From Macrostomum lignano (lineage: Eukaryota): a DNA stretch of 64,000 bases. Below, piece by piece: positions 19,244 through 43,816 of this stretch (positions are counted from its first letter, which is position 1; every line of letters begins with the position of its first letter). Location: positions 1-64,000 of the forward strand of contig NIVC01002965.1 in assembly GCA_002269645.1 (NCBI GenBank), given 5' to 3'. The position numbers were made by a program, and so were the translations under genes. The notes under the pieces were generated by a model, which was given only the letters and a program-made list of their open reading frames with translations, searched no databases and had not been told where the DNA came from.

Positions 19244-20842
19244 ATGGACACGGTACTGGCCTCTATGCTGACTGTGCTCCAAGCCGCAGCCTTCATCATT
19301 TTTCCCAATGTTGGTGGTGCTGTTGGCTCCATAGTGACTGGCAAAGAGCTCAAAGATTGGTACCTCAAGCTCAACAAGCCGCCATGGACTCCACCAAACT
19401 GGGTCTTCCCACCAATGTGGATCTTCTTGTACTCGTGCATCGGCTTTGCTAGCTGGATCGTGTTCCTTCATGTGGGATTTCAAAATGTTGGAATGTATCT
19501 GTATGCCGCCCAGCTGGCTTTGAACTGGGCTTGGTCGCCCCTGTTCTTCGGCGCTCACTGGTGCGTATTGTGTTCGTCACATTGTTTTTATGCAGAATTT
19601 ACACTGATTTCTGCAAATCTGAATCTTGAGATCCTTCACCCAACCCCAAATCTTAACCCTAACCGATTCTTTACTCAACCCGATTCTTCACCCAACTCGA
19701 ATCTTCACCCAACCCGAATCTTCACCCAACTCGAATCTTCACTTAACCAGAATCTTCACCCAACCCGAATATTTACCCAGCCCGAATCCTCACCCAACTC
19801 GAATCTTCACCCAACCCGAATCTTTACCCAACCAGAATCTTCACCCAACCCGAATCTTTACCTAACTCGAATCTTCACCCAACCCGATCGAATCATCACC
19901 CAACTCGAATCTTCACTTAACCAGAATCTTCACCCAACCCGAATCTTCACCCAACCCGAATCTTCACCCAACCCGAATCTTCACCCAACCCGAATCTTCA
20001 CCCAACCCGAATCTTCACCCAACCCGAATCATCACCCAACTCGAATCTTCACTTAACCAGAATCTTCACCCAACCCGAATATTTACCCAGCCCGAATCCT
20101 CACCCAACTCGAATCTTCACTCAACCCGAATCTTCACCCAACTCGAATCTTCACTTAACCAGAATCTTCACCCAACCCGAATCTTCACCCAACCCGAATC
20201 TTCACCCAACCCAAATCTTCACCCAACCCAAATCTTCACCCAACCCGAATCTTTACCCAACTCGAATCTTCACTTAACCAGAATCTTCACCCAACCCGAA
20301 TCTTCACCCAACTCGAATCTTCACTTAACCAGAATCTTCACCCAACCCGAATCTTCACCCAACCCAAATCTTCACCCAACCCGAATCTTCACCCAACCCG
20401 ATTCTTCACCCAACCCGAATCTTCACCCAAACCGATTCTTCACCCAACCCGATTCTTCACCCAACCTGAATCTTCACCCAACTCGAATCTTTACCCAACC
20501 CGAATCTTCACCCAACCCGAATATAACTCAACCCGAGTCTTCACCCAACTCGAATCTTCACCCAACCCGAATCTTGAATGAAGCGATACTGTTAGACCAT
20601 TATGGTTTATTTTAGTTATTAGCCATTAAACTTGTCTTTGCAGGGTGGCCCTAGCCGCACTGGACATGATGGCCATGATTGGCCTTTCAATCGCCTGTGG
20701 CATCGAGTTTTACCAAGTCAACCCCGTTGCTGGGGCCCTCATTGTGCCCTACCTGCTCTGGCTGAGTCTGGCTCTGTCAATCAATGTCTACGTTTATTTT
20801 TATAACGACACCGCAGTGTTGCGCAACGAAAAGAAGACCTGA
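19244..20842 (+). CDS. TSPO: Translocator protein (TspO/MBR family) paralogue 1, 171 aa
   Basis: Exons 19244-19560 and 20644-20842 (GT-AG, phase 2). Motifs WYLKLNKPPWTPPNWVF, QLALNWAWSPLFFG and PYLLW. Confidence 0.93.
19630..20575. repeat. 17-bp minisatellite in the TSPO-1 intron, about 55 copies
   Basis: Unit ACCCAACCCGAATCTTC. Confidence 0.95.
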
Positions 20843-21728: not shown

Positions 21729-23047
21729 ATGTCTCACCTACTAGCAAACGCCTCAGCCTACCTGAAACCTGCCGCATTTGTGATCGCGCCACACCTTGGC
21801 GGCGCATTCGGCGCTATTGTCACTCGCAATGAGATCCCGGTCTGGTACCGTCGGATCAACAAACCGCCGTGGACGCCGCCAAACTGGGTGTTCGGGCCTA
21901 TGTGGTCGTTTTTGTACACGAGTATTGGCTACTCAAGCTGGCTTATTTACAAAGAGCTCGGACTGCAGAATAAGCCAATGTACCTGTTTGGTGCTCAGCT
22001 GGCTCTTAACTGGGCCTGGTCACCGCTCTTCTTTGGGGCGCACAGGTCTGTCAGATGCTGGCAACTTTAAACTAAACATTGTTATCAGTCTAGTTTTCTG
22101 CTGTCTGTCTCCCCGTGTGGACTATCTCTCCATCTCCCTCTGTGATCTCTCTCCTTTCTCCCATTAACTGTCTCCCACTCCCTTCTCCCTGTCTCCCTCT
22201 CCCTATCCCCTTCTCCCATCTCCCTGTCTCCCTCTCCCTATCCAATCTACCTGTCTCCCTCTCCCTGTCTCCCTCTCCCTCTCCCTTTCTCCCTCTCCCT
22301 GTCTCCCTCTCCCATCTACCTGTCTCCCTCTCCCTGTCTCCGTCTCCCTTTCTCCCTCTCCCTATCTCCTATCTCCCTGTCTCCCTCTCCCTTCTCCCTG
22401 TCTTCCTCTCCCTTCTACCTGTCTCCCTTCCCGGTCTCCCTCTCCCTGTCTCCCTCTCCCTGTCTCCCTCTCCCTGTCTCCCTCTCCCATCTACCTGTCT
22501 CCCTCTCCCTGTCTCCGTCTCCCTTTCTCCCTCTCCCTATCTCCTATCTCCCTGTCTCCCTCTCCCTTCTCCCTGTCTTCCTCTCCCTTCTACCTGTCTC
22601 CCTTCCCGGTCTCCCTCTCCCTGTCTCCCTTCTCCCTGTCTCCCTCTCCCATCTCCCTCTCCCATCTCCCTCTCCCATCTCCCTGTCTCCCTCTCTGTCT
22701 CCCTCTCCCTTTCTCCCTCTTCTTTCACTCCTGGCTTTCTGTTCTATCTTCTCCAATCTCCCCTAGACAGTTTAATCAGTCAAAAAGCAACAGAATATTT
22801 TCCACCTGCAGCACCATTAATTCCGCTATTTTCTTCGCCTCTAACATTCGCCAACAGAGTCGGCCTGTCGGTCATTGACATGGTTGGCATGCTGGGCCTC
22901 GCGGCCCTGTGCGCCAAAGAGTTCCGGCCCGTAAGTCAGACAGCCTTCCGCCTCATGCTGCCCTACCTGGGCTGGCTTAGCCTGGCCCTGTCAATCAATG
23001 TCTACGTTTGGCTGAACAACGATTCCAAGACTCTCCGCGTGGATTGA
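21729..23047 (+). CDS. TSPO: Translocator protein paralogue 2, 168 aa
   Basis: Exons 21729-22045 and 22858-23047 (GT-AG, phase 2, same intron position as paralogue 1). Motifs WYRRINKPPWTPPNWVFG and PYLGW. Confidence 0.93.
22115..22735. repeat. Polypyrimidine (CT-rich) low-complexity tract in the TSPO-2 intron
   Basis: Almost purine-free CTCCCTGT / CTCCCT repeats. Confidence 0.95.
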
Positions 23048-23489
23048 GCTTAGAGACAGCAAGCACTTGTAACACCTTGTTTATTGGCAATTCACCTGTT
23101 CACCCTTGATCTATTTCATCAAGTTTTTAGTTTGACAATCTTGTCCCAGATTTATTGTAGTTGCAAGTTCAACTTTGAATACCAATTATTAAATGAGTGC
23201 CTTATTATTTTCGATAATTTATTGTTGCTGTGCGTTTCGTAACAAATTTTCATTCGCACAAAATTGTGCAATTCGATTTTGTTCCGCTTTTCGAATTTCG
23301 AATTTCGTGATTTGCCACGGCTCGTGAGACAAGTTTTAGTGCAAAACAAAAATAGTGTACTATTCTATACTTTAGAAATATTTCGACACAATTGTTTCCC
23401 AACGTTTTTCTATCTGTTTCTTGCTTCTTTTAAATTGCTTTCTTGGTCGTTATCGCTATAAATGGGGCTATACAGTTCCTTTTTAGGTT

Positions 23490-24238
23490 GTTAAAATCGC
23501 GTCGTTCGTTGTTAGGATCTCCATTTGGTTGTTAAAATCGCCCTTTTGGTTGTTAAAACCGCCCTTTTGGTTGTTAGAATCGCCCTTTTAGTTGTTAAAA
23601 TCGCCCTTTTGGTTGTTAGAATCGCCCTTTTGGTTGTTAGAATCGCCCTTTTAAATGTTAGAATCGCCATTTTGGTTGTTAGAATAGCCCTTTTGGTTGT
23701 TAAAATAGCACTTTTGGTTGTTAGAATCGCCCTTTTGGTTGTTAGAATCGCCCTTTTGGTTGTTAGAATCGCCCTTTGGGTTGTTAGAATCGCCCTTTTG
23801 GTTGTTAGAATAGCCCTTTTGGTTGTTAGAATCGCCCTTTGGGTTGTTAGAATCGCCCTTTTGGTTGTTAGAATAGCCCTTTTGGTTGTTAAAATAGCCC
23901 TTTTGGTTGTTAGAATCGCCCTTTTGGTTGTTAAAATAGCCCTTTTGGTTGTTAGAATCGCCCTTTTGGTTGTTAGAATAGCCCTTTTGGTTGTTAAAAT
24001 AGCCCTTTTGGTTGTTAGAATAGCCCTTTTGGTTGTTAAAATAGCCCTTTTGGTTGTTAGAATAGCCCTTTTGGTTGTTAAAATAGCCCTTTTGGTTGTT
24101 AGAATCGCCCTTTTGGTTGTTAGAATAGCCCTTTTGGTTGTTAAAATAGCCCTTTTGGTTGTTAGAATCGCCCTTTTGGTTGTTAGAATCGCCCTTTTGG
24201 TTGTTAGAATCGCCCTTTGGGTTGTTAGAATCGCCTTC
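23490..24238. repeat. 21-bp minisatellite, about 34 copies
   Basis: Unit GTTGTTAGAATCGCCCTTTTG, between TSPO-2 and TSPO-3. Confidence 0.95.
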
Positions 24239-24360: not shown

Positions 24361-27300
24361 ATGTCGCCAATCTCTGACTACTTGAAACCGGCCGCCTTTG
24401 TTCTGCTGCCTCACGTCGGTGGCATCGGAGGAGCCATAATTACGCGCTCGCAGATCCCGGTCTGGTATAGCAACTTGGTCCGCGCACCCTGGAATCCACC
24501 AAAATGGGTATTCGGACCCGTGTGGACCAGCCTGTACACTGGCATGGGCTACGCTAGCTGGCTAGTGTACAAAGAGGCTGGACTCAAGAGTACACCTATG
24601 TACTTGTACGGTGCTCAGCTGGCTCTTAATTGGGCTTGGACGCCCATGTTTTTCGGCGCTCACAAGCAAGTGGATTGATTTTATAATAATTTAATCCACT
24701 AATTCGCTAATGTATTTAGCGGCCGTCTCCGAGGCCCCGAAAACCCTGGGGTTTGGGCCGCAGACACCAGCTGCTACTAATGTCTTGATGGCAGCCGACA
24801 GTAGAAGCTATATAGTCTATGGTCTTAACCCCGGGGGTTTCGCGCTGCGTCTGAGGCGGCTTGAGAGGCCCATCTAGGTAATAAAGCATTTTCCTAGCTA
24901 ATTGAGCCTAGGAGCAAGCAATTTAAGCCTTATTGGGGGAATCAAGCTATTGAAGACTTGCTTTTCATTGTCGATGACCCAAAAGGGGGTCTATGGAGCA
25001 ACCAATTTGAGAATCTGGGCGCGCAATTAATCCCTTTTCACAGTGCTCGTATATCCTTCACGAATAACTTCACTGAAATAACGTCTGCAAATAGATGGCA
25101 TATCAAAAAATGATTGAAATTAACACTGATTTCAGAGAAACCAATCAAAACAGGCAAAGGCAAAACCATGGCATTCAATATAAGCTGAGAACAATCGTGT
25201 CTCTCAGGATGCTCATCCACTGCATCTTGGGCTGTAGCAAAACTATCGTCACTGCTCTGCTCGCTAAATTCTTCGTCTGCCATATCCATGTTTGTCTAAT
25301 GAAATCTGTTTTTTTTTCTATGGTTTAAGGCTTGCATAACTGTGGAAAGGATTAAAAGCGCCCAGATTCTCAAATTGGCTGCTCCATGGACCCCCTTTCG
25401 GGCCATAGACAATGAAAAGCAAGTCTTCAATGGCTTGATTTTCCCACTAGGGGTTGAATCGCTTGCTCCTGGGCTCAATTGGCTTGAAAAATGCTATATA
25501 ATCTGTGCATTTGGGTTTACACGCACAGAATTTAATTCAAGATATGTTTGCCATAGCAATGGAGCTTTTGTCTATGGTCCATTCGGTTCATAGCGGCTCT
25601 ATAGATTCACCCCAAGATTTTCATTTAAACATAATTAAGTCATGCTAAAAAGCTCTTTTTGTTTTTCTTATAGTTGAGCTGATTGCATCTTTGACGTCAC
25701 TTTGTTTGTACATTGAAAGGGGATGTCAACTTAAGCACCAGAATGGAGCCCGAAGTTCAGCTCCGGACCAAACCGACTGCAATCGATAACTTGTCGGCCC
25801 AGACGACTAGAATCGCCGAGACATCCCATCCGGCTCCCTTCCTTGGGGTCCCAGGGGATAAAGGGGATAAAATGGGGATCTCATGTCAACTTAAGGCTCT
25901 GGAATGGAGCCCGAAGTTCAGCTCCGGACCAAACCGACTGCAATCGATAACTTGTCGGCCCAGACGACTAGAATCGCCGAGACATCCCATCCGGCTCCCT
26001 TCCTTGGGGTCCCAGGGGATAAAGGGGATAAAATGGGGATCTCATGTCAACTTAAGGCTCTGGAATGGAGCCCGAAGTTCAGCTCCGTACCAAACCGACT
26101 GCAATCGATAACTTGTCGGCCCAGACGACTAGAATCGCCGAGACATCCCATCCGGCTCCCTTCCTTGGGGTCCCAGGGGATAAAGGGGATAAAATGGGGA
26201 TCTCATGTCAACTTAAGGCTCTGGAATGGAGCCCGAAGTTCAGCTCCGGACCAAACCGACTGCAATCGATAACTTGTCGGCCCAGACGACTAGAATCGCC
26301 GAGACATCCCATCCGGCTCCCTTCCTTGGGGTCCCAGGGGATAAAGGGGATAAAATGGGGATCTCATGTCAACTTAAGGCTCTGGAATGGAGCCCGAAGT
26401 TCAGCTCCGGCCCAAACCGACTGCAATCGATAAGTTGTCGGCCCAGACGACTAGAATCGCCGAGACATCCCATCCGGCTCCCTTCCTTGGGGTCCCAGGG
26501 GATAAAGGGGATAAAATGGGGATCTCATGTCAACTTAAGGCCCTGGAATGGAGCCCGAAGTTCAGCTCCGGACCAAACCGACTGCAATCGATAACTTGTC
26601 GGCCCAGACGACTAGAATCGCCGAGACATCCCATCCGGCTCCCTTCCTTGGGGTCCCAGGGGATAAAGGGGATAAAATGGGGATCTCATGTCAACTTAAG
26701 GCTCTGGAATGGAGCCCGAAGTTCAGCTCCGGACCAAACCGACTGCAATCGATAACTTGTCGGCCCAGACGACTAGAATCGCCGAGACATCCCATCCGGC
26801 TCCCTTCCTTGGGGTCCCAGGGGATAAAGGGGATAAAATGGGGATCTCATGTCAACTTAAGGCTCTGGAATGGAGCCCGAAGTTCAGCTCCGGACCAAAC
26901 CGACTGCAATCGATAACTTGTCGGCCCAGACGACTAGAATCGCCGAGACATCCCATCCGGCTCCCTTCCTTGGGGTCCCAGGGGATAAAGGGGATAAAAT
27001 GGGGATCTCATGTCAACTTAAGGCCCTGGAATGGAGCCCGAAGTTCAGCTCCGGACCAAACCGACTGCAATCGATAACTTGTCGGCCCAGACGACTAGAA
27101 TCGCCGAGACATCCCATCCGGCTCCCTTCCTTGGGGTCCCAGGGGATAAAGGGGATAAAATGGGGATCTCATGTCAACTTAAGGCTCTGGAATGGAGCCC
27201 GAAGTTCAGCTCCGGCCCAAACCGACTGCAATCGATAAGTTGTCGGCCCAGACGACTAGAATCGCCGAGACATCCCATCCGGCTCCCTTCCTTGGGGTCC

Positions 27301-30300
27301 CAGGGGATAAAGGGGATAAAATGGGGATCTCATGTCAACTTAAGGCCCTGGAATGGAGCCCGAAGTTCAGCTCCGGACCAAACCGACTGCAATCGATAAC
27401 TTGTCGGCCCAGACGACTAGAATCGCCGAGACATCCCATCCGGCTCCCTTCCTTGGGGTCCCAGGGGATAAAGGGGATAAAATGGGGATCTCATGTCAAC
27501 TTAAGGCCCTGGAATGGAGCCCGAAGTTCAGCTCCGGACCAAACCGACTGCAATCGATAACTTGTCGGCCCAGACGACTAGAATCGCCGAGACATCCCAT
27601 CCGGCTCCCTTCCTTGGGGTCCCAGGGGATAAAGGGGATAAAATGGGGATCTCATGTCAACTTAAGGCTCTGGAATGGAGCCCGAAGTTCAGCTCCGGAC
27701 CAAACCGACTGCAATCGATAACTTGTCGGCCCAGACGACTAGAATCGCCGAGACATCCCATCCGGCTCCCTTCCTTGGGGTCCCAGGGGATAAAGGGGAT
27801 AAAATGGGGATCTCATGTCAACTTAAGGCTCTGGAATGGAGCCCGAAGTTCAGCTCCGGACCAAACCGACTGCAATCGATAACTTGTCGGCCCAGACGAC
27901 TAGAATCGCCGAGACATCCCATCCGGCTCCCTTCCTTGGGGTCCCAGGGGATAAAGGGGATAAAATGGGGATCTCATGTCAACTTAAGGCTCTGGAATGG
28001 AGCCCGAAGTTCAGCTCCGTACCAAACCGACTGCAATCGATAAGTTGTCGGCCCAGACGACTAGAATCGCCGAGACATCCCATCCGGCTCCCTTCCTTGG
28101 GGTCCCAGGGGATAAAGGGGATAAAATGGGGATCTCGTGTCAACTTAAGGCTCTGGAATGGAGCCCGAAGTTCAGCTCCGGACCAAACCGACTGCAATCG
28201 ATAAGTTGTCGGCCCAGACGACTAGAATCGCCGAGACATCCCATCCGGCTCCCTTCCTTGGGGTCCCAGGGGATAAAGGGGATAAAATGGGGATCTCATG
28301 TCAACTTAAGGCTCTGGAATGGAGCCCGAAGTTCAGCTCCGGACCAAACCGACTGCAATCGATAAGTTGTCGGCCCAGACGACTAGAATCGCCGAGACAT
28401 CCCATCCGGCTCCCTTCCTTGGGGTCCCAGGGGATAAAGGGGATAAAATGGGGATCTCGTGTCAACTTAAGGCTCTGGAATGGAGCCCGAAGTTCAGCTC
28501 CGGACCAAACCGACTGCAATCGATAAGTTGTCGGCCCAGACGACTAGAATCGCCGAGACATCCCATCCGGTTTCAAGTGACGAAGCTCTATTCAATTCGA
28601 ATATCGCATTAGCGGGTGTATTTTATTTCAGCTATTATACATTGATTGTTAAGTAATAAAAATGATTTGCTCGTATCGAAACCTGTTAAAAATGCTGATC
28701 TGGAAACTCAGTTTGAAAAAATTAACTTGTAAATTCGTTTGGTTATTAGTAAGCAGAACTTTTGACGATAAACCGAAACCATGTATATTGGTAAAATAAA
28801 GAATATCACGCAAGGCTGTACAAGTTATGACGTAATGGATACAAAGCATATCATGCAAAGCTGTACAAGTTATCAAAGTAATAAAAACAAAGCATGTCAT
28901 GCAAAGCAGCACACGTTTTTAAGCAAATAAAGTAACGCCTCTCACGCAAAGCTTAGTAAAATCATAATTGCAAAAGTTTCTCAGTCCTAAGAAACGGTTT
29001 TTGGGTTTAAGTTCTTTGCTTCAGTAAAAAATACTTCCAATTTTTAGTTAATTGTGAGTCTAAAAGAAATTGAAACAACTAATTCAAAGCTTTTGTTATT
29101 TGATGTCAGTCTGAATTATCTTCACATGTAACCTATGGTACGTAAAGAATGCGTGAGATGACATTGTTTCTTAATCTGCATGTCCTTTAAAATCTGCAAT
29201 ACAAAACGTACAGTACACTCGCTTAAAACAATTGTATTTTCGCTAAAAATGCTTTTACGAGTTTAAAAGTGCAACGAGCACGATGCACTCAGGCTCACGT
29301 ACGAACGGGTTATAGTCTGACGTAACTTTCATGTCGTCAATTCTCGTCCACACACAGCTCAGTACGCTTGCTGTGAAATGTCCCGATTTCAGTCGGTTTC
29401 CATGGTGTGATATTGTGGCCACTGGCTTACCAAGTGTAGAAACACCCCCTGACCTTGAAGAAAAGCTTACAGGAGTTTGAAGCTTAAGGTGGCCATCCAT
29501 ACTAGCACGATCAAGATATATCAGGGTAAACTTTCCAGGTGTTACTACGATCTCTTGATTACAATCGCCCAGGCAATTGGCGTCCGAACATTTCACTACC
29601 TGAGGAGCGACAAAAGCGCAGAAGATTTTGTCTAAACTGACAATTGAGCGCTCAAATTGACAGAGAGGAATGCAAATCACTCTGTTATCGATTGTGCCAA
29701 CAGGAACTTCAGCACTTGTGCGCTGGCAATCCCGACAAGTTTGAATGAGTGAAAATTCTGTGAAAGCATCTGATGACAGAAATTCCAGATGTATTAGAAG
29801 CGTTTGAACAAATTCGTTGACGCAATGGTGCTGATTTGTTTGAAATGAATCTGGATGTTGCAACCGAACTGCCGTTAACAGTGGAGTGACTGTTGCAGAC
29901 CGCTGTTGCATCTCCATCAGAAGACGAAGCAGCTCTCGATGGACTTGGTCGTTGCTAGTCTCTTTTAAAATGCATCCATTAGAATGCAGGCAGAGAAACA
30001 ATTGCACTGCTGCATTTGCGTAGCACTGCAGGCCATTATTTGGCAACCCAAATAACTTCTTCGGCGAATTCAATGAACCAGTAGCATTTGAACTGTGCCT
30101 CTGTTCATCTTGCTGCGATTCAGCACTGTCTCTGCGAGGTGCATTTGGAGCTGGATGACCACCAGATTGATCATTGTAAAGATTGGCAATCAGTGCTTTT
30201 GGCAAAGCACTGTCAATAAATCGGAAGCTGCTGCCGCACATGTTGTAGCTTTCGGGGTGATATGCATAACAGCCTAGCATTCTAACCACAGCCATAACAT

Positions 30301-33300
30301 GACTGTCACACCCTGCTGTCCTGCTTCCGGCCTTTGAGGATGAAAAGTAGCCATGCAGACGCAGCAGCCCCGAGTCACGAAATCCGAATCGGTTACCACT
30401 TGCAGTTTCGCAAATACGAAGGACAACTCGGTAAGTTTTTGACCGATGACGGGAATGAAGAACGGCTAAATATATCCAAGATGGCCTCCATTCTCCAAAC
30501 TTACTGCTCCACCCCTTTGGTGGCGCTCGCTGATGAAACTTCCAGCATTTTAAATGGCTTGGCAGTTCAGAAATCAACAATTCGAAATCGCGCCACGAGT
30601 CTCCAGCGTAGCTACTGAGCACCTCATGAACTCTGACGTTTTCGATGTAGCGTTTTGACTGAAGAACGTGGTATGGGCCGATGCTAAGCTCTTCCAGATT
30701 TCTTTCGTCAACGCTGGGGAACCCTGAACTTTCAGGGTCCAGGGGATCCACTGCTGTCCATTTTCGGGTAGAACTCGTTGGTATTCGAGTCAAATCGCAA
30801 TTGTACTCAAGTTGCTCAATTTCGTCTAGCTCATTCGCAATGAAAAGACGTTTAGCAAAGTTCCGTCCGTATTCGAACATGGAGCAATCTGACCATGACG
30901 GCGGCAGACTCCTTGTAGCTTGAAATCCTGGATGCGAACGGTTGAATTTTGCCATGGAGTTTTCAATAACAACATCGAGCCGGCTGCGTTCGGTAAACTC
31001 TGGGGCATGTAGCCATTGGTACGGCTCCTGTCGCTCATTTATGCATTTGTCCTGCTTGATTGCAGCAAAGCTACATTCTACGAGATAACGGAAAAGCGTA
31101 GCGCAGCGACTTGTATTTGCTTCGATTGATGTAAGCTTTCCTGGTATTGATCGGTCACCAACAGGAGCCTCATTATTTACAAATTCAAACTGCTCGTTTA
31201 GAACTCGGTCACCTGGACTGGTCGGAAATAGAAGCGTCGTGCAGCCTTTACTATTAGTCTCTATAAAGTCGCGGAAGTTAACCGAAGTTGGTGAACAAAG
31301 TTGGTGGCTGTAACCTTTGTCGAAAATGCCAATAACGTGATAATCTTTCTGTACAGAGCACAGAATGCGCAACAAAGTGGGCTCTATTAGTCCTTCAGCC
31401 TCCATGTCAACTTGCATTGCAGTCAAATTCCCATCGCCCATTGTTGGCGAGATAGCGGCGGTAAGGGGAGCGGTGTAGATAACTTTTCCTCTACTGTTGA
31501 CAACCGCCATTTTTTTGTTCACATTCATTTTCTTGCCGGAAAAGTAAGTTCGAATTTGCGTGTGGTGTGAGCTGCTCTTAGGGAGATAAAAGTAAGTATG
31601 ATCACCCACTAGAAGAACAAGCTTCTTGCCTTTGAGTAGTGTGTGAAATACACCGAGAATAAATTGATCGCGTACTACATTTTCCTCAAGCAGAGTCTGA
31701 ATCGGAGTCGACGCTATCGACCTCGGTTGATATGGATCCCGTAGGTACTGCTCCTTGGCAATCTCCCAAAAAATGTCGCATGCTCTTTGGGCAGAAATGT
31801 TGAAATCGAAAGCTAATGATTGAAAGCTGCAACCTTGGCGAAGCTTCTTCAGGTACAAAAATATTCGAGATGGCTTTGTCAAAATACGAAGGCGAGATAC
31901 TTCTGGTAACATTTCTGAGAAGCTATCGAAATCACTATAGCTAAGACCGCAAATACGTTTGAACTCCTTCTCATTTGCGGTTCGTGGAAAAAGGTTTGGG
32001 TTCAAAAAAACTTTCACATACTTACCACCGACCGCAAGAAACTGAAGCGCCTCTCGTGCGTTTCTCGGAGGCGCGAAGGCTCCAGACGATTCAGATGAGC
32101 AGCGACCACATCTAGTCGTTTCGAGATGTCGGTTCAAATTGGCTGCTTTGCTGAATTGATGACCACATTGAGAGCAAGTAAAATCGGACATTACTAGCAA
32201 GTATAAAACGCAATCTGCAACAAATCTGCACCTGTCATAAAACTAAGTAAGAAAAACTGACCAAAACCTTAACTTCATTAATATATCACTTAAAATATAT
32301 CACTTAAACTAATGCTACAAATACTTGACGCACAGTATCAAAAATCTCTCGCCTAAAGTGGTCAAATCAAAACCGCGAAAACATTCTCAAAAATCCGGAA
32401 AAATTAAACGACGGAAATATTACAATGCAAACAATATATAATAGCTAAAATAAAATACACCCGCTAATGCGATATTCGAATAGAATAGAGCTTCGTCACT
32501 TGAAACCGGATGGGATGTCTCGGCGATTCTAGTCGTCTGGGCCGACAAGTTATCGATTGCAGTCGGTTTGGTCCGGAGCTGAACTTCGGGCTCCATTCCA
32601 GAGCCTTAAGTTGACATGAGATCCCCATTTTATCCCCTTTATCCCCTGGGACCCCAAGGAAGGGAGCCGGATGGGATGTCTCGGCGATTCTAGTCGTCTG
32701 GGCCGACAAGTTATCGATTGCAATCGGTTTGGTCTGGAGCTGAACTTCGGGCTCCATTCCAGAGCCTTAAGTTGACATGAGATCCCCATTTTATCCCCTT
32801 TATCCCCTGGGACCCCAAGGAAGGGAGCCGGATGGGATGTCTCGGCGATTCTAGTCGTCTGGGCCGACAAGTTATCGATTGCAGTCGGTTTGGTCCGGAG
32901 CTGAACTTCGGGCTCCATTCCAGAGCCTTAAGTTGACACGAGATCCCCATTTTATCCCCTTTATCCCCTGGGACCCCAAGGAAGGGAGCCGGATGGGATG
33001 TCTCGGCGATTCTAGTCGTCTGGGCCGACAAGTTATCGATTGCAATCGGTTTGGTCCGGAGCTGAACTTCGGGCTCCATTCCAGAGCCTTAAGTTGACAT
33101 GAGATCCCCATTTTATCCCCTTTATCCCCTGGGACCCCAAGGAAGGGAGCCGGATGGGATGTCTCGGCGATTCTACTCGTCTGGGCCGACAAGTTATCGA
33201 TTGCAATCGGTTTGGTCCGGAGCTGAACTTCGGGCTCCATTCCAGAGCCTTAAGTTGACATGAGATCCCCATTTTATCCCCTTTATCCCCTGGGACCCCA

Positions 33301-35354
33301 AGGAAGGGAGCCGGATGGGATGTCTCGGCGATTCTAGTCGTCTGGGCCGACAAGTTATCGATTGCAATCGGTTTGGTCCGGAGCTGAACTTCGGGCTCCA
33401 TTCCAGAGCCTTAAGTTGACATGAGATCCCCATTTTATCCCCTTTATCCCCTGGGACCCCAAGGAAGGGAGCCGGATGGGATGTCTCGGCGATTCTAGTC
33501 GTCTGGGCCGACAAGTTATCGATTGCAGTCGGTTTGGTCCGGAGCTGAACTTCGGGCTCCATTCCAGAGCCTTAAGTTGACACGAGATCCCCATTTTATC
33601 CCCTTTATCCCCTGGGACCCCAAGGAAGGGAGCCGGATGGGATGTCTCGGCGATTCTAGTCGTCTGGGCCGACAAGTTATCGATTGCAGTCGGTTTGGTA
33701 CGGAGCTGAACTTCGGGCTCCATTCCAGAGCCTTAAGTTGACATGAGATCCCCATTTTATCCCCTTTATCCCTGGGACCCCAAGGAAGGGAGCCGGATGG
33801 GATGTCTCGGCGATTCTAGTCGTCTGGGCCGACAACTTATCGATTGCAGTCGGTTTGGTCCGGAGCTGAACTTCGGGCTCCATTCCAGAGCCTTAAGTTG
33901 ACACGAGATCCCCATTTTATCCCCTTTATCCCCTGGGACCCCAAGGAAGGGAGCCGGATGGGATGTCTCGGCGATTCTAGTCGTCTGGGCCGACAAGTTA
34001 TCGATTGCAGTCGGTTTGGTCCGGAGCTGAACTTCGGGCTCCATTCCAGAGCCTTAAGTTGACATGAGATCCCCATTTTATCCCCTTTATCCCCTGGGAC
34101 CCCAAGGAAGGGAGCCGGATGGGATGTCTCGGCGATTCTAGTCGTCTGGGCCGACAAGTTATCGATTGCAGTCGGTTTGGTCCGGAGCTGAACTTCGGGC
34201 TCCATTCCAGAGCCTTAAGTTGACATGAGATCCCCATTTTATCCCCTTTATCCCCTGGGACCCCAAGGAAGGGAGCCGGATGGGATGTCTCGGCGATTCT
34301 AGTCGTCTGGGCCGACAAGTTATCGATTGCAGTCGGTTTGGTCCGGAGCTGAACTTCGGGCTCCATTCCAGAGCCTTAAGTTGACATGAGATCCCCATTT
34401 TATCCCCTTTATCCCCTGGGACCCCAAGGAAGGGAGCCGGATGGGATGTCTCGGCGATTCTAGTCGTCTGGGCCGACAAGTTATCGATTGCAGTCGGTTT
34501 GGTCCGGAGCTGAACTTCGGGCTCCATTCCAGAGCCTTAAGTTGACATGAGATCCCCATTTTATCCCCTTTATCCCCTGGGACCCCAAGGAAGGGAGCCG
34601 GATGGGATGTCTCGGCGATTCTAGTCGTCTGGGCCGACAAGTTATCGATTGCAGTCGGTTTGGTCCGGAGCTGAACTTCGGGCTCCATTCCAGAGCCTTA
34701 AGTTGACATGAGATCCCCATTTTATCCCCTTTATCCCCTGGGACCCCAAGGAAGGGAGCCGGATGGGATGTCTCGGCGATTCTAGTCGTCTGGGCCGACA
34801 AGTTATCGATTGCAGTCGGTTTGGTCCGGAGCTGAACTTCGGGCTCCATTCTGGTGCTTAAGTTGACATCCCCTTTGATAAAATTAATTGGATTACACAG
34901 GTGTAACTCATGAATGATTGGGCTACCTTGCTACCATAGACAAAAGCTGCATTACTTTCTCTCATCTCTTTAGTGTACTTTTTATGGACTGTGTGCGTAC
35001 GTAATTGACGATGACTGCTTCGCCTTCACACTCGCTAGCAAGCCTTATTTGAAAATGACACATCACCTTATTTTAATGTAAGCGACCTTGAAAGTTGATC
35101 ATCTTCACGACTTTTCACTTCACTAAAACCGCAGGGTTGGCCTCGCCTGCCTGGACCTGCTGGCAACCCTCGGCCTTGTTGTCGCCTGCGCTAAGGAATT
35201 CTCGTCGGTGAACCAGACAGCCGGCCGTCTCATGCTGCCCTACATTGGCTGGCTGTGCCTGGCTGCTACCCTCAACATCTACATCTGGTTCTACAACGAC
35301 TCGCGCACCCTTAGCGGCGAAGGTGCCTCCCAGCAGGCCAAGTCGAAGAAGTAA
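24361..35354 (+). CDS. TSPO: Translocator protein paralogue 3, 174 aa, with a 10.5-kb GC-AG intron
   Basis: Exon 1 24361-24665 ends CAC AA|gcaagt. Exon 2 35135-35354 (ccgcag|G GTT GGC CTC; not in the ORF track) encodes KVGLACLDLLATLGLVVACAKEFSSVNQTAGRLMLPYIGWLCLAATLNIYIWFYND...KK*, collinear with exon 2 of paralogues 1 and 2. Confidence 0.88.
24885..25495. mobile_element. MITE-like element with ~160-bp imperfect inverted repeats
   Basis: 24885-25044 is the reverse complement of 25339-25495 with scattered mismatches (shared core TTGAAGACTTGCTTTTCATTGTC; CAATTTGAGAATCTGGGCGC). No TSD resolved. Confidence 0.7.
25717..28648 (+). repeat. Left inverted arm: about 17.6 x 161-bp units plus ~78 bp unique inner IR
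   Basis: The ATGGAGCCC landmark recurs every 161 bp from 25743 to 28480 (18 times). Confidence 0.97.
29255..32200 (-). CDS. 981-aa fusion: C2H2 finger, HTH + DDE transposase (DDE_Tnp_4-like), degenerate SWIM-like finger, ubiquitin-specific protease (peptidase C19)
   Basis: CSQCGHQFSKAANLNRH; LRQGCSFQSLAFDFNIS; GD200HTY, GD256GNL, FD294KGY, VE375CSF; KAGSRTAGCDSHV; GLPNNGLQC726YANAAVQ, QHHCVNEF, HHGNRLKSGH941FTA, WTRID955D956. Intronless, no stops. Confidence 0.9.
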   Translation of the reverse strand: MLVMSDFTCSQCGHQFSKAANLNRHLETTRCGRCSSESSGAFAPPRNAREALQFLAVGGKYVKVFLNPNLFPRTANEKEFKRICGLSYSDFDSFSEMLPEVSRLRILTKPSRIFLYLKKLRQGCSFQSLAFDFNISAQRACDIFWEIAKEQYLRDPYQPRSIASTPIQTLLEENVVRDQFILGVFHTLLKGKKLVLLVGDHTYFYLPKSSSHHTQIRTYFSGKKMNVNKKMAVVNSRGKVIYTAPLTAAISPTMGDGNLTAMQVDMEAEGLIEPTLLRILCSVQKDYHVIGIFDKGYSHQLCSPTSVNFRDFIETNSKGCTTLLFPTSPGDRVLNEQFEFVNNEAPVGDRSIPGKLTSIEANTSRCATLFRYLVECSFAAIKQDKCINERQEPYQWLHAPEFTERSRLDVVIENSMAKFNRSHPGFQATRSLPPSWSDCSMFEYGRNFAKRLFIANELDEIEQLEYNCDLTRIPTSSTRKWTAVDPLDPESSGFPSVDERNLEELSIGPYHVLQSKRYIENVRVHEVLSSYAGDSWRDFELLISELPSHLKCWKFHQRAPPKGWSSKFGEWRPSWIYLAVLHSRHRSKTYRVVLRICETASGNRFGFRDSGLLRLHGYFSSSKAGSRTAGCDSHVMAVVRMLGCYAYHPESYNMCGSSFRFIDSALPKALIANLYNDQSGGHPAPNAPRRDSAESQQDEQRHSSNATGSLNSPKKLFGLPNNGLQCYANAAVQLFLCLHSNGCILKETSNDQVHRELLRLLMEMQQRSATVTPLLTAVRLQHPDSFQTNQHHCVNEFVQTLLIHLEFLSSDAFTEFSLIQTCRDCQRTSAEVPVGTIDNRVICIPLCQFERSIVSLDKIFCAFVAPQVVKCSDANCLGDCNQEIVVTPGKFTLIYLDRASMDGHLKLQTPVSFSSRSGGVSTLGKPVATISHHGNRLKSGHFTASVLSCVWTRIDDMKVTSDYNPFVREPECIVLVALLNS
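29258..30062 (-). other. USP/C19 deubiquitinase catalytic domain (C-terminal ~265 aa of the transposase ORF)
   Basis: Cys box, Q-box, CRDC...CSDANC zinc-ribbon pair, His box and the following Asp occur in canonical order. Confidence 0.85.
32428..34875 (-). repeat. Right inverted arm: about 14.6 x 161-bp units plus unique inner IR
   Basis: The reverse-complement landmark recurs 15 times from 32596 to 34849; one unit is 160 bp. Confidence 0.97.
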
Positions 35355-35824: not shown

Positions 35825-36555
35825 GTTTCCGGGGGATGCAGTGGGTCTTCAGGAGATGCAGTGAGTCTTCAGGAGATGCAGTGGGTCTTCAGGAGATGCA
35901 GTGTGTCTTCAGGAGATGCAGTGGGTCTTCAGGAGATGCAGTGGGTCCTCAGGAGATGCGGTGGGTTTTCTGGGGATGCAGTCAGTCTTCAGGAGATGCA
36001 GTGGGTCTTCAGAAGATGCGGTGGGTTTTCGGGAGATGCAGTGGATCTTCAGGGGATGCAGTCAGTCTTCAGGAGATGCGGTAGGTTTTCAGATGTAGTG
36101 TGCCTTCAGGGCCTGCAGTGGGTTCAGGGACTGTAGTGGGTCTTCAGGAGATGCGGTGGGTTTTCGGGAGATGCAGTGGATCTTCAGGAGATGCAGTGGG
36201 TCTTCAGGAGATGCGGTGGGTTTTCGGGAGATGCGGTGGGTCTTCAGGAGATGCGGTGGGTTTTCGGGAGATGCAGTGGATCTTCAGGGGATGCAGTGGG
36301 TCTTCAGGAAATGCGGTAGGTTTTCGGGAGATGCAGTGGGTCTTCAGGGAATGCAGTCAGTCTTCAGGAGATGCGGTAGGTTTTCAGATGTAGTGCGCCT
36401 TCAGGGCCTGCAGTGGGTTCAGGGACTGTAGTGGGTCTTCAGGAGATGTAGCGGACCTTCACGGGATGCAGTGGGTCTTCAGGGGATGCGTTGGGTTTTC
36501 TGGAGATGTAGTGGGTCCTCAGGGGACGCAGTGGGTCTTCAAGGGATGCAGTGGG
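35825..36555. repeat. 20-bp minisatellite, about 35 copies
   Basis: Unit CTTCAGGAGATGCAGTGGGT. Confidence 0.95.
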
Positions 36556-37791
36556 TCGTCAGAGAAGCAGCTTGTATTTTAAAGCATATTATTGTTCGAA
36601 AGTTACCAGAAATAATCTACATGCAGCTCGATCACCCAAAAGTAACATAGGGTGCATAGATTGTGATTTGCACTATACACAATATATAAAATCTTATCTC
36701 GAATTTCAACTTTCAAACCCAAGGTTGCAACAGGGCAGCTGCATGTAGATAGAGATTAGCCATTTCTAAGTCAGGTGTTACTGCCCAACTGCAGCACTTT
36801 CATTTTAGCTGTGCCTTGATTATCCGTGCCGAACTCTTTTGATCCTTGGGTGGGGTTAAATTCCATGCTGCTCTGACGCTATCTATAACTGACCATTTTA
36901 CCTTAAGAGAAGACATAGAGAGAGATATTTCACTGCTTCCAAGTCTGTAGCGTTGCAACTACGTTTTTAGATAAAGCTTGCTGCAAAAATCATTTTCAAT
37001 AAGTGTCATTTGAGTGCACACAACTAGAAGCATATTTTATCAGGTTTTGGTAACTCTGGAAATTTAGCAGATGCGAAATTGTTTCTCTGGCTTAGATACG
37101 AGTAGTTAGAAATATGGCTCTGGTTATACCTGGGTAAATACAGTAAGTAGTAAGTTGAGTCTAATTGAAATCCTGCAAACTCCAAGTGTGCAGGATTTCC
37201 CGCATACTGACGCAGATCGACGCATCCCAGGGGTTAGAAAAATTGGGGCGTACCCCTCTTGGGGGGGACAGCTTTAGAGACTTTGGTTTGGACATGTGGG
37301 GTCCAGCTCAGACTGCAGCGGTTTGCCCAACGCTCGGCATGGTGGTTGAAGGCTTGGAGGAGGTCTCATAGGACCGCGGTTGATGGTTCAGCCATAGGGG
37401 TGGTAACAGCGTCCGTATAGCGGACCTTGTGTACCGGGTCAGGACACGGACTGCTGAGAAAATCTTCCATGACCACGTTCTAGAGAATTGGGCTGAGGAC
37501 TCCACCTTGCGGTCCACCTTTCTGGGCCTCCACATAGCAGGAGTGCCCGAGGACGTGCAAGGTGGTAGTCCGATGAGAGACCATTAACAGAATTACTACG
37601 TATCCAATAGAAAGTTAGACGTCTTCAATACGTATTTTTTAGGTCGTAAGAACGTCCGCGAGACGTATCCAATGCATTTATGATCCTCAAAAAGCTGGTT
37701 TCTACAAAAAAGGAGAATAAATAATGTTTCTATTACTATTTATTACTTGTGTGAGACAGTGGCTCGCAACAGAAGACAATGGCGCTCAATT

Positions 37792-43139: not shown

Positions 43140-43816
43140 AGACAGTGGCGCTCAATTCAATACGGTGACACCCTATACAAAGCTAAGGGGCTGTCACTTA
43201 AAGAAATCATTTGAAGCTCCATAAAAAGCCGAGCAACATTTTTAGGACATCGGCATTTGGTATTAACTAGACTCGTTGAATATATAAATATTGTATTGTC
43301 GCTAATTTTCAATACTTTTATCTGGCACGTTTTCTGTTAGCTTGTGAATGACGGGGCCTTTAATTGCACTGATCAACCCCCATAGCAACGGTTCAATTCA
43401 TAAATAGGAAAACTAGCAGCGCGTCTTACTAGTGAACTCACACGGTCTTAGCAGTATGAAATGCCTACTAATTGTGCTCTGCCTTTTCGTCCCTCCCAGC
43501 AAGCAGAGGGTGATAATGCCAAACAGAAACTGTGGAGATTACAAAATGCATTGAACATTCTCTTTCTCACAAATGCTGCTGCTGGCAACACAGTTTGCTA
43601 TCAATCGAGCAGCGCATGCCACGTTGGCCTGCCACTCCGATAAAAGTTTTGAATAGCGCGAATTACTGCACTGGAAAATCTGCGGTAGAATTGAATTCGC
43701 TATTCAATATATAGGCTGAACCCTGGGGGTTCAAATGTCACTATCTACCTGCGGAGCGGTTTCTGTATCGGCAATTAGTCAACCAAAGTGCAGCTAAACG
43801 CATTAACGAGTTGGCC

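What the first reader, a model, noticed from the sequence alone, without database searches (positions are those of the whole stretch)
25717..34875. Candidate new transposon family: Harbinger/ISL2EU-type transposase-deubiquitinase flanked by kilobase satellite TIRs
Seen directly: exact terminal inverted repeats, near-identical arms, one uninterrupted 981-aa ORF with DDE residues and a USP catalytic set, and an intact host gene around it, consistent with a young insertion. Known: PIF/Harbinger elements usually have short TIRs and a second Myb/SANT ORF, and ISL2EU elements usually have a YqaJ nuclease ORF. Neither is visible in the 3.8-kb core. I do not know a described family combining these features; novelty is my inference.
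Basis: partly seen in the sequence, partly recalled or inferred. Interest (0 to 1): 0.9.

Follow-up and report, generated by a model that had tools for sequence, protein, structure and literature searches.

The report
Flatworm transposon encoding a transposase-deubiquitinase fusion
This is a real, intact 9.2-kb DNA transposon in the flatworm Macrostomum lignano: its single gene fuses a cut-and-paste transposase to a ubiquitin-removing enzyme, its ends are kilobase arrays of a 161-bp repeat, and it is an undescribed offshoot of the known "Spy" branch of PIF/Harbinger-like transposons rather than a wholly new kind.

Summary
The element spans 25717-34875. Its 40-nt termini are exact. The arms are 17.7 and 14.7 copies of a 161-bp unit, 99% identical in register. 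One intact 978-aa ORF lies between them. The element sits in the intron of the third of three tandem TSPO paralogs.

The host is Macrostomum lignano. The protein has a C2HC zinc finger, an HTH, an RNase-H-type DDE core (AF2 pLDDT 92.8), a degenerate SWIM-like finger, and a USP domain with an intact Cys/His/Asp set.

About 128 relatives exist, nearly all from metagenomes. Several divergent ones carry the same transposase-USP fusion.

The closest recognisable relatives have the published Spy signature, and one sits in an element with AAA|GGAGGATG…|TTT ends.

Our clade differs from Spy in DDE spacing (D93D80E), the zinc finger, the USP domain and the satellite arms.

Two annotated M. lignano proteins are read-throughs of arm–deleted ORF(–arm) derivatives, so other copies exist.

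Verdict: new variant of a known kind (PHIS superfamily, Spy-related). Function of the USP domain is inferred, not shown.

The parts
25719..34873 (-). Whole element under the Spy-type reading (GGGG…CCCC, no target duplication).
   Evidence: Inverted repeat runs from 25716 to 34876. Exact 40-nt termini. Flanks read.
25716..25718 (+). Left flank AAA. This is half of a putative AAA|TTT Spy-type target, or alternatively part of TIR/TSD.
   Evidence: Spy target described in PMC4122938. The same AAA|GG… arrangement is seen in Spy element L014.
34874..34876 (+). Right flank TTT, the other half of the putative AAA|TTT target.
25719..28658 (+). Left arm, downstream of the gene: a terminal 24-nt variant unit, 17.7 x 161-bp units, then 88 nt of unique inverted sequence (28571-28658). 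It carries 52 GGGGAT motifs, all in one orientation, in triplets spaced 9 and 11 bp apart.
32418..34873 (-). Right arm, upstream of the gene: 14.7 units plus 88 nt of unique inverted sequence (32418-32505). It carries 42 GGGGAT motifs and is 99.0% identical to the left arm in register from the tip.
29255..32191 (-). Single uninterrupted ORF of 978 aa from the first ATG (981 codons from the upstream TTG), stop codon included. It encodes the transposase-USP fusion.
32108..32176 (-). N-terminal C2HC/C2H2-type zinc finger (CX2CX12HX5C), conserved in P0001 and P0003-P0005.
   Evidence: Pfam zf-C2H2 E 0.0025, below the curated cut-off. Alignments.
31766..31882 (-). Helix-turn-helix of the PHIS type (HTH_Tnp_4).
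   Evidence: Pfam E 7.7e-5, below the gathering score. The same domain is found in 25 of 44 relatives. Helical in the AF2 model.
31076..31603 (-). DDE catalytic core from D197 (GDHTY) through D291 (FDKGY) to E372 (R-x3-E, LVECSF), in 978-aa numbering. The spacing is D(93)D(80)E.
   Evidence: In the AF2 model D197 lies in a strand, D291 just after a strand, and E372 in a long helix. hhalign against the DDE_Tnp_4-positive set gives probability 100%, E 2.4e-74.
30131..30913 (-). Conserved C-terminal transposase region ending in a SWIM-like finger. The family consensus is CxCxxGxRTxGCCSH. In this copy it is degenerate (SSS…GCDSH): two Cys are lost.
   Evidence: The region is confidently folded.
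29258..30049 (-). USP (peptidase C19) deubiquitinase domain. It has the Cys box GLPNNGLQC723YANAAVQ, the His box SHHGNRLKSGH938FTA, DD952-953, and the zinc-ribbon CxxC…CxxxxC.
   Evidence: Pfam UCH E 4e-9. Profile against PDB: USP8/USP2 at about E 1e-35. AF2 pLDDT 88.2. Foldseek: USP18/46/35/2 at about E 1e-17, TM about 0.7.
24361..24678 (+). Exon 1 of the host TSPO paralog whose intron carries the element.
   Evidence: Pfam TspO_MBR E 8.8e-32. tblastn.
35130..35288 (+). Exon 2 of the same TSPO paralog.
   Evidence: tblastn with human TSPO residues 103-155.

Best explanation
This is a young, apparently autonomous cut-and-paste DNA transposon of the PHIS (PIF/Harbinger-ISL2EU-Spy) superfamily in Macrostomum lignano. 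It belongs to an undescribed lineage whose closest recognisable relatives are Spy elements.

Proposed mechanism:
- The single protein binds the element ends through its N-terminal zinc finger and HTH.
- The likely binding sites are the terminal GGGGATGTCAACTTAAG motif and its variants. These are reiterated once per 161-bp unit, together with GGGGAT triplets in helical phase, giving about 50 sites per arm.
- The RNase-H-type DDE core (D197, D291, E372) excises the element and re-inserts it, most likely between AAA and TTT without a target duplication, as in Spy.
- The arms arose by tandem amplification of the terminal unit. They change copy number by unequal exchange (17.7 versus 14.7 units).
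- The C-terminal USP domain is a conserved, catalytically competent deubiquitinase. I infer that it removes ubiquitin from the transposase itself, or from chromatin or repair proteins at the break, to stabilise the transposition complex or steer repair.

Shown: the anatomy, the folds, the homology, conservation of the fusion in divergent relatives, and the existence of deletion derivatives in the same genome.
Inferred: current activity, the binding sites, the target rule, and the role of the USP domain.
For: Structure and insertion:
- Exact termini, arms 99% identical, single intact ORF.
- Insertion in a TSPO intron that is about 9 kb longer than in the two neighbouring paralogs.

Transposase:
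- The AF2 model of aa 40-700 has pLDDT 92.8 and pTM 0.90, with D/D/E on the canonical RNase-H elements.
- The only weak PDB neighbours are the P-element and Tn5 transposases.
- Close homologs P0006 and P0008 pass the Pfam DDE_Tnp_4 cut-off.
- Of 44 more distant homologs, 32 hit DDE_Tnp_4 and 25 hit HTH_Tnp_4.
- The profile-profile match to that set has probability 100%, E 2.4e-74, over 518 columns from the HTH to the SWIM finger.

Link to Spy:
- That distant set has D(79-82)D(47-53)E, matching the published Spy D(79-80)D(44-62)E (PMC4122938).
- One member, P0101, lies in an element with a roughly 135-nt imperfect TIR ending AAA|GGAGGATG… …|TTT. This is the Spy target and the GGANNNNG terminus.
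- Our flanks are AAA|GGGGATG…CATCCCC|TTT.

USP domain:
- Pfam E 4e-9.
- Profile against PDB about E 1e-35.
- Foldseek about E 1e-17.
- Catalytic boxes intact.
- The transposase-USP fusion recurs in P0010, P0021, P0033, P0065/P0082, and the P0001+P0007 pair, at 25-51% identity.

Other copies in the same genome:
- M. lignano protein A0A1I8IYQ6 (P0018) reads as satellite unit (100% over 31 aa), then deleted transposase, then inverted satellite.
- UPI0007A1D47C (P0011) reads as 86 aa of satellite at 97.7%, then a transposase remnant with the same deletions.

Host: M. lignano, from 98% identity of a neighbouring gene.

Binding motifs: GGGGAT occurs 52 and 42 times in the arms, always in one orientation, against once in the core.
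Against: - Only one full copy is visible, and no empty site was found. The target rule (AAA|TTT versus a TGA duplication) therefore rests on a single insertion plus analogy.
- Our own protein does not reach any Pfam DDE model. Its superfamily assignment comes through homologs and profile comparison.
- It departs from canonical Spy in several ways. The DDE spacing is D93D80E. By my reading of the consensus, only about half of the 15 Spy-specific residues are kept. The terminus is GGGGATGT rather than GGANNNNG.
- The SWIM-like finger has lost two of its cysteines in this copy, which may mean the copy is not fully functional.
- No polyadenylation signal or TATA box was found next to the ORF.
- No evidence of expression or mobility is available here.
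- Nothing here tests the role, or even the activity, of the USP domain.
Confidence: 0.8

Rival explanations
1. This is a PIF/Harbinger- or Nuwa/Pangu-like element that makes a 3-bp target duplication (TGA). Its TIRs begin AAGGGG and it spans 25717-34875.
For: TGA is present immediately outside both ends at those boundaries (25714-25716 and 34876-34878). Three-base duplications are the rule in most PHIS groups (PMC4482050).
Against: - TGA fits none of the described target consensus sequences (TWA, ANT, CWG, C|TNA|G, A|AT|T).
- PHIS TIRs normally begin with GG or AG, not AA.
- A 3-nt match at some offset is not rare by chance.
- The nearest relatives with visible ends show AAA|GG….
- There is no Myb/SANT ORF.
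Confidence: 0.25
2. The copy in the window is a dead or domesticated relic. On this view the transposase-USP gene is a host gene, or an inactive remnant, sitting between two blocks of an unrelated satellite. The inverted arrangement would come from a local inverted duplication rather than from transposition.
For: - Only one full copy is seen in 64 kb.
- The SWIM-like finger is degenerate.
- No promoter or poly(A) signals were found.
- M. lignano is very repeat-rich, with many arrays in this window.
Against: - The arms end in the same exact 24-nt non-unit sequence at both tips, and an 88-nt unique inverted segment lies inside them.
- The arms are in register from the tips.
- The block lies inside an otherwise ordinary short intron.
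- Independent gene models elsewhere in the genome combine the same satellite with deleted transposase sequence in the same order and orientation.
- All catalytic residues of both enzymes are intact.
- Relatives are multi-copy in metagenomes, for example 19 contigs for P0033.
Confidence: 0.07
3. It is a Foldback-type element whose mobility depends mainly on its long satellite arms, through recombination or hairpin formation. The enclosed transposase-USP gene would then be cargo rather than the enzyme that moves it.
For: The architecture, with kilobase TIRs built of tandem repeats and arms of unequal copy number, is that of Foldback and Galileo elements (my own knowledge; Galileo long TIRs with multiple binding sites, PMC3688188 abstract).
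Against: - The terminal motif is reiterated within every unit.
- Deletion derivatives keep arms together with transposase remnants.
- At least one relative also has tandem repeats next to its ORF (L007).
- These points fit cognate transposase and ends. Galileo shows that long repeat TIRs are compatible with ordinary transposase-driven movement.
Confidence: 0.05

Closest known systems
Spy group of the PHIS superfamily (Han et al. 2014, PMC4122938; active cgSpy/cvSpy, Diaby et al. 2024, PMC11304231)
   Same: - Single ORF and no second gene.
- N-terminal HTH and a DDE_Tnp_4-type core.
- A transposase module of about 690 aa that aligns end to end (hhalign probability 100%), including the C-terminal CxC…CCxH finger and acidic tail.
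- Flanks AAA|…|TTT, with a TIR starting GG.
- TIR length in Spy is highly variable (9-1474 bp).
- Found in invertebrates.
   Different: - DDE spacing is D93D80E instead of D(79-80)D(44-62)E, because of an insertion of about 30-50 aa between the second D and E.
- About half of the Spy-specific residues are lost.
- The terminus is GGGGATGT rather than GGANNNNG.
- There is an N-terminal zinc finger, whereas Spy is reported to lack zinc fingers.
- There is a C-terminal USP domain.
- The TIRs are 2.5-2.9 kb and made of a 161-bp tandem repeat, whereas long Spy TIRs were reported to have no subrepeat structure.
- The host phylum, Platyhelminthes, is not in the reported Spy distribution.
ISL2EU group (PHIS)
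   Same: It is the sister clade of Spy, with a large transposase, an N-terminal zinc-binding DNA-binding domain, an HTH and a DDE core. Its TIRs start with GG.
   Different: - ISL2EU makes A|AT|T 2-bp duplications.
- It has a THAP finger and a second ORF with a YqaJ exonuclease domain.
- None of these is present here.
PIF/Harbinger proper
   Same: Same superfamily (DDE_Tnp_4 and HTH_Tnp_4 in relatives).
   Different: PIF/Harbinger has a TWA duplication, short TIRs, a transposase of about 350-500 aa, and an obligatory Myb/SANT second ORF. All are absent here.
Foldback / Galileo-type elements
   Same: Kilobase TIRs made of tandem subrepeats that carry reiterated transposase-binding motifs, with arms of unequal length.
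   Different: They encode unrelated transposases (MuDR-like or P-type with THAP) and make 7-9-bp target duplications.
Transposon proteins fused to ubiquitin/SUMO-type cysteine proteases
   Same: An accessory deubiquitinase-type cysteine protease is fused to, or encoded with, the mobility enzyme. Examples are Ulp1 in MULEs and Ginger1, OTU in Ginger1 and Helitrons, and VTD in Helentrons. An IS5-like transposase plus Peptidase C19 protein in Trichomonas vaginalis is noted in PMC2836005. The proposed roles are protecting transposition proteins or modulating repair.
   Different: Here the protease is a USP (C19) fused to a Spy-like PHIS transposase in animals and plankton. Apart from the one-line mention of the Trichomonas protein, I found no description or test of such a fusion.

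Membership tests
PHIS superfamily (PIF/Harbinger-ISL2EU-Spy; Pfam DDE_Tnp_4) | Transposase catalytic domain alignable with DDE_Tnp_4 / IS5-type transposases, including the D…K…D…D…P…R(3)E pattern. | tested here: met
   The query itself misses the Pfam DDE model. However, clade members P0006 and P0008 pass the cut-off, and 32 of 44 distant homologs hit DDE_Tnp_4. hhalign of our clade against that set gives probability 100%, E 2.4e-74, with D/D/E aligned. The R-x3-E motif is present (RYLVE).
PHIS superfamily | RNase-H-like fold with D on beta-1, D after beta-4, and E on a following helix. | tested here: met
   AF2 model with pLDDT 92.8. D161 lies in strand 154-166, D255 after strand 248-253, and E336 in helix 319-342, in segment numbering.
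Spy group | Insertion between AAA and TTT with no target site duplication. | tested here: inconclusive
   The flanks are exactly AAA|GGGG…CCCC|TTT. Only one insertion is available and no empty site was found. A TGA duplication with an AAGGGG TIR cannot be excluded.
Spy group | Single long ORF and no accessory ORF. | tested here: met
   One ORF fills the core. Only 596 and 217 nt remain on either side.
Spy group | D(79-80)D(44-62)E spacing and 15 group-specific conserved residues. | tested here: not met
   The spacing is D(93)D(80)E here and in the whole close clade, while the distant homolog set has 79-82/47-53. By my reading of the A2 consensus against our sequence, about 7 of the 15 residues are kept.
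Spy group | Terminal 5'-GGANNNNG-3' consensus. | tested here: not met
   The terminus is GGGGATGT. Only the GG start and an internal GGATG are shared with Spy element L014, whose terminus is GGAGGATG.
ISL2EU group | A|AT|T target with a 2-bp AT duplication. | tested here: not met
   No AT duplication is possible at any boundary offset.
ISL2EU group | THAP domain in the transposase and a second ORF with a YqaJ exonuclease domain. | tested here: not met
   Pfam finds zf-C2H2, not THAP. None of the 44 relatives hits THAP. There is no second ORF.
PIF/Harbinger proper | 3-bp TWA duplication and a Myb/SANT-type second ORF. | tested here: not met
   The candidate duplication would be TGA, and there is no second ORF.
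USP / peptidase C19 deubiquitinases | USP fold with the Cys box, the His box, and the catalytic Asp/Asn. | tested here: met
   Pfam UCH E 4e-9. Profile against PDB about E 1e-35 to USP8/USP2. AF2 pLDDT 88.2 and Foldseek about E 1e-17 to USP18/46/35/2. C723, H938 and D952/953 align to the conserved columns.
USP / peptidase C19 deubiquitinases | Hydrolysis of ubiquitin (or a ubiquitin-like modifier) conjugates. | not testable with these tools
   This needs an enzyme assay.
Foldback-like elements | Long TIRs composed of tandem subrepeats. | tested here: met
   This is an architectural resemblance only, because the transposase is unrelated to those of Foldback (FB4) and Galileo.

The most novel reading that the evidence does not exclude
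A previously unrecognised, deep-branching lineage of Spy-like PHIS transposons has carried a catalytically active USP deubiquitinase as an integral part of its transposase since before its major subclades split. The lineage is widespread in marine plankton and flatworms. On this reading the deubiquitinase is required for transposition, for example by shielding the transposase or stripping ubiquitin marks at the break. The M. lignano copy would still be mobile, giving a TSD-less, native transposon tool for a regenerating flatworm model.
Probability: 0.25. Interest if true: 0.75.

Novelty: new variant of a known kind. Interest (0 to 1): 0.6.

Why it matters
Why so many unrelated transposons carry ubiquitin- or SUMO-type proteases (Ulp1, OTU, VTD) is an open question.

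- This element offers a compact, single-protein case. A canonical USP is fused in frame to a DDE transposase, and both active sites are intact. The fusion is conserved across relatives that share only 25-50% identity.
- That makes the question directly testable with point mutants in a standard two-plasmid assay.
- Spy elements insert without a target duplication and are being developed as gene-transfer tools. A divergent relative with its own end architecture widens that toolbox.
- The host, Macrostomum lignano, is a transgenesis-ready regeneration model, so a native and possibly active element matters practically.
- The satellite arms document a route by which a transposon end becomes a tandem array. 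This is relevant to the origin of satellites from mobile elements.

Tried and rejected
- Pfam on the whole protein and on sub-segments gave no DDE hit for the query itself.
- phmmer of the whole protein and of the USP segment against PDB found only zinc-finger noise, or nothing. A profile was needed.
- The word-indexed protein search returned a single homolog. The exhaustive HMMER search was needed to find the rest.
With a two-sequence alignment it found no relative in JGI metagenome contigs.
- A scan of the metagenome collection for a 21-nt piece of the satellite unit gave one chance match in a GC-rich bacterial contig.
- The search for a paralogous empty site in the other two TSPO introns and in the rest of the window found nothing alignable.
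- The search with the satellite-encoded peptide found nothing significant.
- I tried to define the ends of the P0033 and P0010 family elements from several metagenome contigs. Contigs stop in or near repeats, and the one divergence point (L002/L003) showed no clear TIR.
- Contig L012 ends inside its own 30-nt TIR, so its flanks are not visible.
- No reference Spy, ISL2EU or Harbinger protein sequences could be obtained from paper supplements. A labelled phylogeny was therefore not possible.
- Literature searches for a USP-bearing PHIS element found only the Trichomonas remark. Repbase and Dfam could not be searched.
- I considered a THAP-like reading of the N-termini of some distant relatives. 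I rejected it for lack of any Pfam THAP hit.
Full report
**1. What is in the sequence**

- A 40-nt sequence occurs exactly twice in the 64-kb window, in inverted orientation, at 25717-25756 and 34836-34875.
- Inside these tips lie two arrays of a 161-bp unit. One has 17.7 copies (25723-28570) and the other 14.7 copies (32506-34869), with 98-99% internal identity.
- Read from the tips, the two arms align in register over 2369 nt at 99.0% with one 1-nt gap. The left arm is longer by exactly three units.
- A further 88 nt of non-satellite sequence inside each array is also inverted, 80/88 identical.
- The terminal 24 nt differ from the unit but are a variant of it. The tip reads AAAGGGGAT-----GTCAACTTAAGC, and the unit junction reads AAATGGGGATCTCATGTCAACTTAAGG. 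The arms therefore look like tandem amplifications of the element's own end.
- Each unit also carries three GGGGAT motifs spaced 9 and 11 bp apart. There are 52 and 42 such motifs in the arms, all in one orientation relative to the tip, against one in the 3.76-kb core.

**2. The core**

The core holds one ORF on the minus strand (29255-32200). It is 981 codons from a TTG and 978 aa from the first ATG. With only 596 and 217 nt left over, there is no room for a second gene. The many 122-aa 'ORFs' in the arms are read-throughs of the 161-bp unit, not genes.

**3. Host and insertion site**

- A neighbouring amiloride-sensitive channel ORF is 98% identical to a UniRef protein of Macrostomum lignano. 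The window therefore comes from that flatworm or a very close relative.
- tblastn with human TSPO shows three tandem two-exon TSPO paralogs.
- The element sits in the intron of the third. That intron is about 10.4 kb, against about 1.1 and 0.8 kb in the others.
- The paralog introns are too diverged to serve as empty sites.

**4. The protein**

- Pfam sees a USP domain (UCH, E 4e-9). It also gives sub-threshold hits to HTH_Tnp_4 and zf-C2H2, but no DDE model.
- The exhaustive HMMER search found 128 relatives. All ten whose clusters I first looked up come only from metagenome or SRA assemblies (ENA/TARA, Logan, JGI). A second look-up traced two weaker hits to M. lignano protein records (section 8).
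- An AlphaFold2 model of residues 40-700, built on a 94-sequence alignment, is very confident (pLDDT 92.8, pTM 0.90). It places D197 in a strand, D291 just after a strand, and E372 in a long helix. This is the RNase-H-type DDE arrangement.
- The PDB holds no close structure. The best weak matches are the P-element and Tn5 transposases.
- The N-terminus has a conserved CX2CX12HX5C finger.
- The transposase module ends in a SWIM-like finger. The family consensus is CxCxxGxRTxGCCSH. In this copy it is degenerate and has lost two cysteines.

**5. The USP domain**

- A profile of the domain and its relatives matches USP8 and USP2 in the PDB at about E 1e-35.
- An AF2 model (pLDDT 88.2) matches USP18, USP46, USP35 and USP2 at about E 1e-17 and TM about 0.7.
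- The Cys box (GLPNNGLQC723YANAAVQ), the His box (SGH938FTA), the DD952-953 pair and the zinc-ribbon cysteines are all present.

**6. Which superfamily and group**

- Two members of the close clade pass Pfam's DDE_Tnp_4 threshold.
- Of 44 more distant homologs, 32 match DDE_Tnp_4, 25 match HTH_Tnp_4 and 24 match DDE_Tnp_1.
- A profile-profile comparison of the close clade with that set gives probability 100% and E 2.4e-74 over 518 columns, from the HTH to the SWIM finger, with the three catalytic residues aligned. The element is therefore a member of the PIF/Harbinger-ISL2EU-Spy (PHIS) superfamily.
- The distant set has D(79-82)D(47-53)E spacing. This matches the published Spy signature D(79-80)D(44-62)E (PMC4122938).
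- The conserved residues of that set follow the order of the 15 Spy-specific residues listed in that paper.
- One member, P0101, lies in a metagenomic element whose imperfect TIR (about 135 nt) ends AAA|GGAGGATGCCCA… and …|TTT. This is the Spy target and the GGANNNNG terminus. I take this set to be Spy-group transposases.
- Our clade is their relative but is distinct. It has D(93)D(about 80)E, caused by an insertion between the second D and E. It keeps about half of the Spy-specific residues and has an added zinc finger.

**7. Target site**

- The flanks read …ACATTG AAA|GGGGATG……CATCCCC|TTT GATAAA….
- Read this way, the element (25719-34873) begins with GG, like nearly all PHIS elements. It sits between AAA and TTT with no duplication, as Spy elements do.
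TGA matches no described PHIS target.
- I favour the Spy-type reading, at about two to one. One insertion cannot settle it.

**8. Is it a family, and are there other copies?**

- The transposase-USP fusion recurs in several divergent relatives:
  - P0010 (1048 aa, TARA Oceans);
  - P0021 (955 aa);
  - P0033 (1119 aa, on 19 contigs);
  - P0065 and P0082 (SWIM finger followed by USP);
  - the closest relative, split between P0001 and P0007.
- Other close relatives (P0003-P0005) lack the USP domain.
- Two distant relatives carry a Ulp1 protease instead.
- Within M. lignano itself, two protein records are chimeric read-throughs of deleted copies. One is a UniRef entry; the other I attribute to M. 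lignano only from its neighbouring UniParc number.
  - A0A1I8IYQ6 (P0018) contains 31 aa identical to the satellite translation. A transposase remnant follows (our residues about 372-470, with deletions), and then 21 aa of satellite translated from the opposite strand.
  - UPI0007A1D47C (P0011) contains 86 aa of satellite at 97.7%, followed by a longer remnant with the same deletions.
- The order and orientation (arm, ORF remnant, inverted arm) mirror the full element. Deletion derivatives with both arms therefore exist elsewhere in this genome.

**9. How it most likely works**

- Shown:
  - the anatomy;
  - the folds of both enzymatic domains, with intact catalytic residues;
  - homology to Spy-type transposases;
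  - conservation of the fusion;
  - the presence of derivatives.
- Inferred:
  - The zinc finger and HTH bind the terminal motif and its reiterations in every unit. Galileo's long TIRs with multiple THAP sites are an analogue (PMC3688188).
  - The DDE core performs cut-and-paste transposition into AAATTT without a duplication.
  - Unequal exchange changes the arm copy number.
  - The USP domain removes ubiquitin from the transposase, or from chromatin or repair factors at the break. This role has been proposed for Ulp1, OTU and VTD domains of other transposons (PMC2836005; PMC9741609).

**10. Novelty**

- Each unusual feature has a precedent.
  - Spy TIRs reach 1474 bp, though they were reported to lack subrepeats.
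  - Foldback and Galileo elements have tandem-repeat TIRs.
  - Protease fusions are known in MULE, Ginger and Helitron elements.
  - A Trichomonas protein with an IS5-type transposase and a Peptidase C19 domain was mentioned in one sentence in 2010.
- I found no description of a Spy-like or other PHIS lineage with a USP fusion, of this DDE spacing, or of such elements in flatworms. Repbase and Dfam could not be searched.
- A 963-aa Spy ORF listed for Hydra may be a similar case that was not remarked upon.
- I rate it a new variant of a known kind.

**11. Caveats**

- The evidence rests on a single full copy.
- There is no empty site and no labelled phylogeny.
- The zinc ligands of the SWIM-like finger are degenerate in this copy.
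- No promoter or poly(A) signals were recognised.
- There are no expression data.

Noticed in passing
window 19283-20809, 21774-23026, 24394-35288: Three tandem two-exon TSPO (TspO/MBR) paralogs lie on the + strand. Only the third has the large intron that carries the element.
   Followed up: partly
window 25555-25578 and 34933-34956: A 24-nt inverted repeat (GCTTTTGTCTATGGT core, 92%) lies outside the element, about 140 nt to the left and 57 nt to the right of it. The element may have inserted into a small inverted-repeat (MITE-like) sequence of about 240 bp. If that sequence is repeated in the genome, it could supply empty sites.
   Followed up: partly
window 24881-25044 and 25339-25499: A 164-nt inverted repeat (85%) lies in the same TSPO intron, upstream of the element. 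It looks like another small foldback or MITE-like element.
   Followed up: no
window 58142-59209 (+): A 355-aa ORF has sub-threshold Pfam hits to mariner/Tc1-type transposase domains (DDE_3, Transposase_1, HTH_48). It is probably a decayed or partial mariner-like element.
   Followed up: no
window 11634-14003, 20000-20575, 22168-22720, 23482-24235, 35835-36570: Many minisatellite arrays with periods of 14-21 bp are present. Two of them produce long spurious ORFs: 789 aa of LLINQGLLHSISQG repeats, and 256 aa of VVRIALL repeats.
   Followed up: partly
window 50757-53507 (-) and 43811-44698 (+): There is an amiloride-sensitive sodium channel (ASC) gene, 98% identical to a Macrostomum lignano UniRef entry, which identifies the host. 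There is also an OATP-family transporter exon.
   Followed up: partly
L007 5832-6346 and L003 6359-6520: Metagenomic relatives with the transposase-USP fusion also have tandem repeats just downstream of the ORF. The P0010 family has units of about 102 bp. The P0033 family has 13-bp GGGGATT-rich repeats. Contigs break near these repeats. Repeat-built subterminal regions may be a trait of the lineage.
   Followed up: partly
L002 1568-2932 and L007 202-1944: In the P0033 and P0010 families, a separate upstream ORF of 454-580 aa lies on the same strand. It has a zinc finger and low-complexity Pro/acidic tracts. It probably corresponds to the long N-terminal extension seen in P0003-P0005, which the M. 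lignano protein lacks.
   Followed up: no
L014 729-3643: This is a compact canonical Spy element in a JGI metagenome contig. It has a 722-aa transposase (P0101), an imperfect TIR of about 135 nt, the terminus GGAGGATGCCCA, and flanks ATAAA|…|TTTAT.
   Followed up: yes
alignment A2 (distant homologs): Two Spy-like transposases carry a Ulp1 (Peptidase_C48) domain and one carries a USP domain. Different ubiquitin/SUMO-type proteases have therefore been joined to this transposase type more than once.
   Followed up: no
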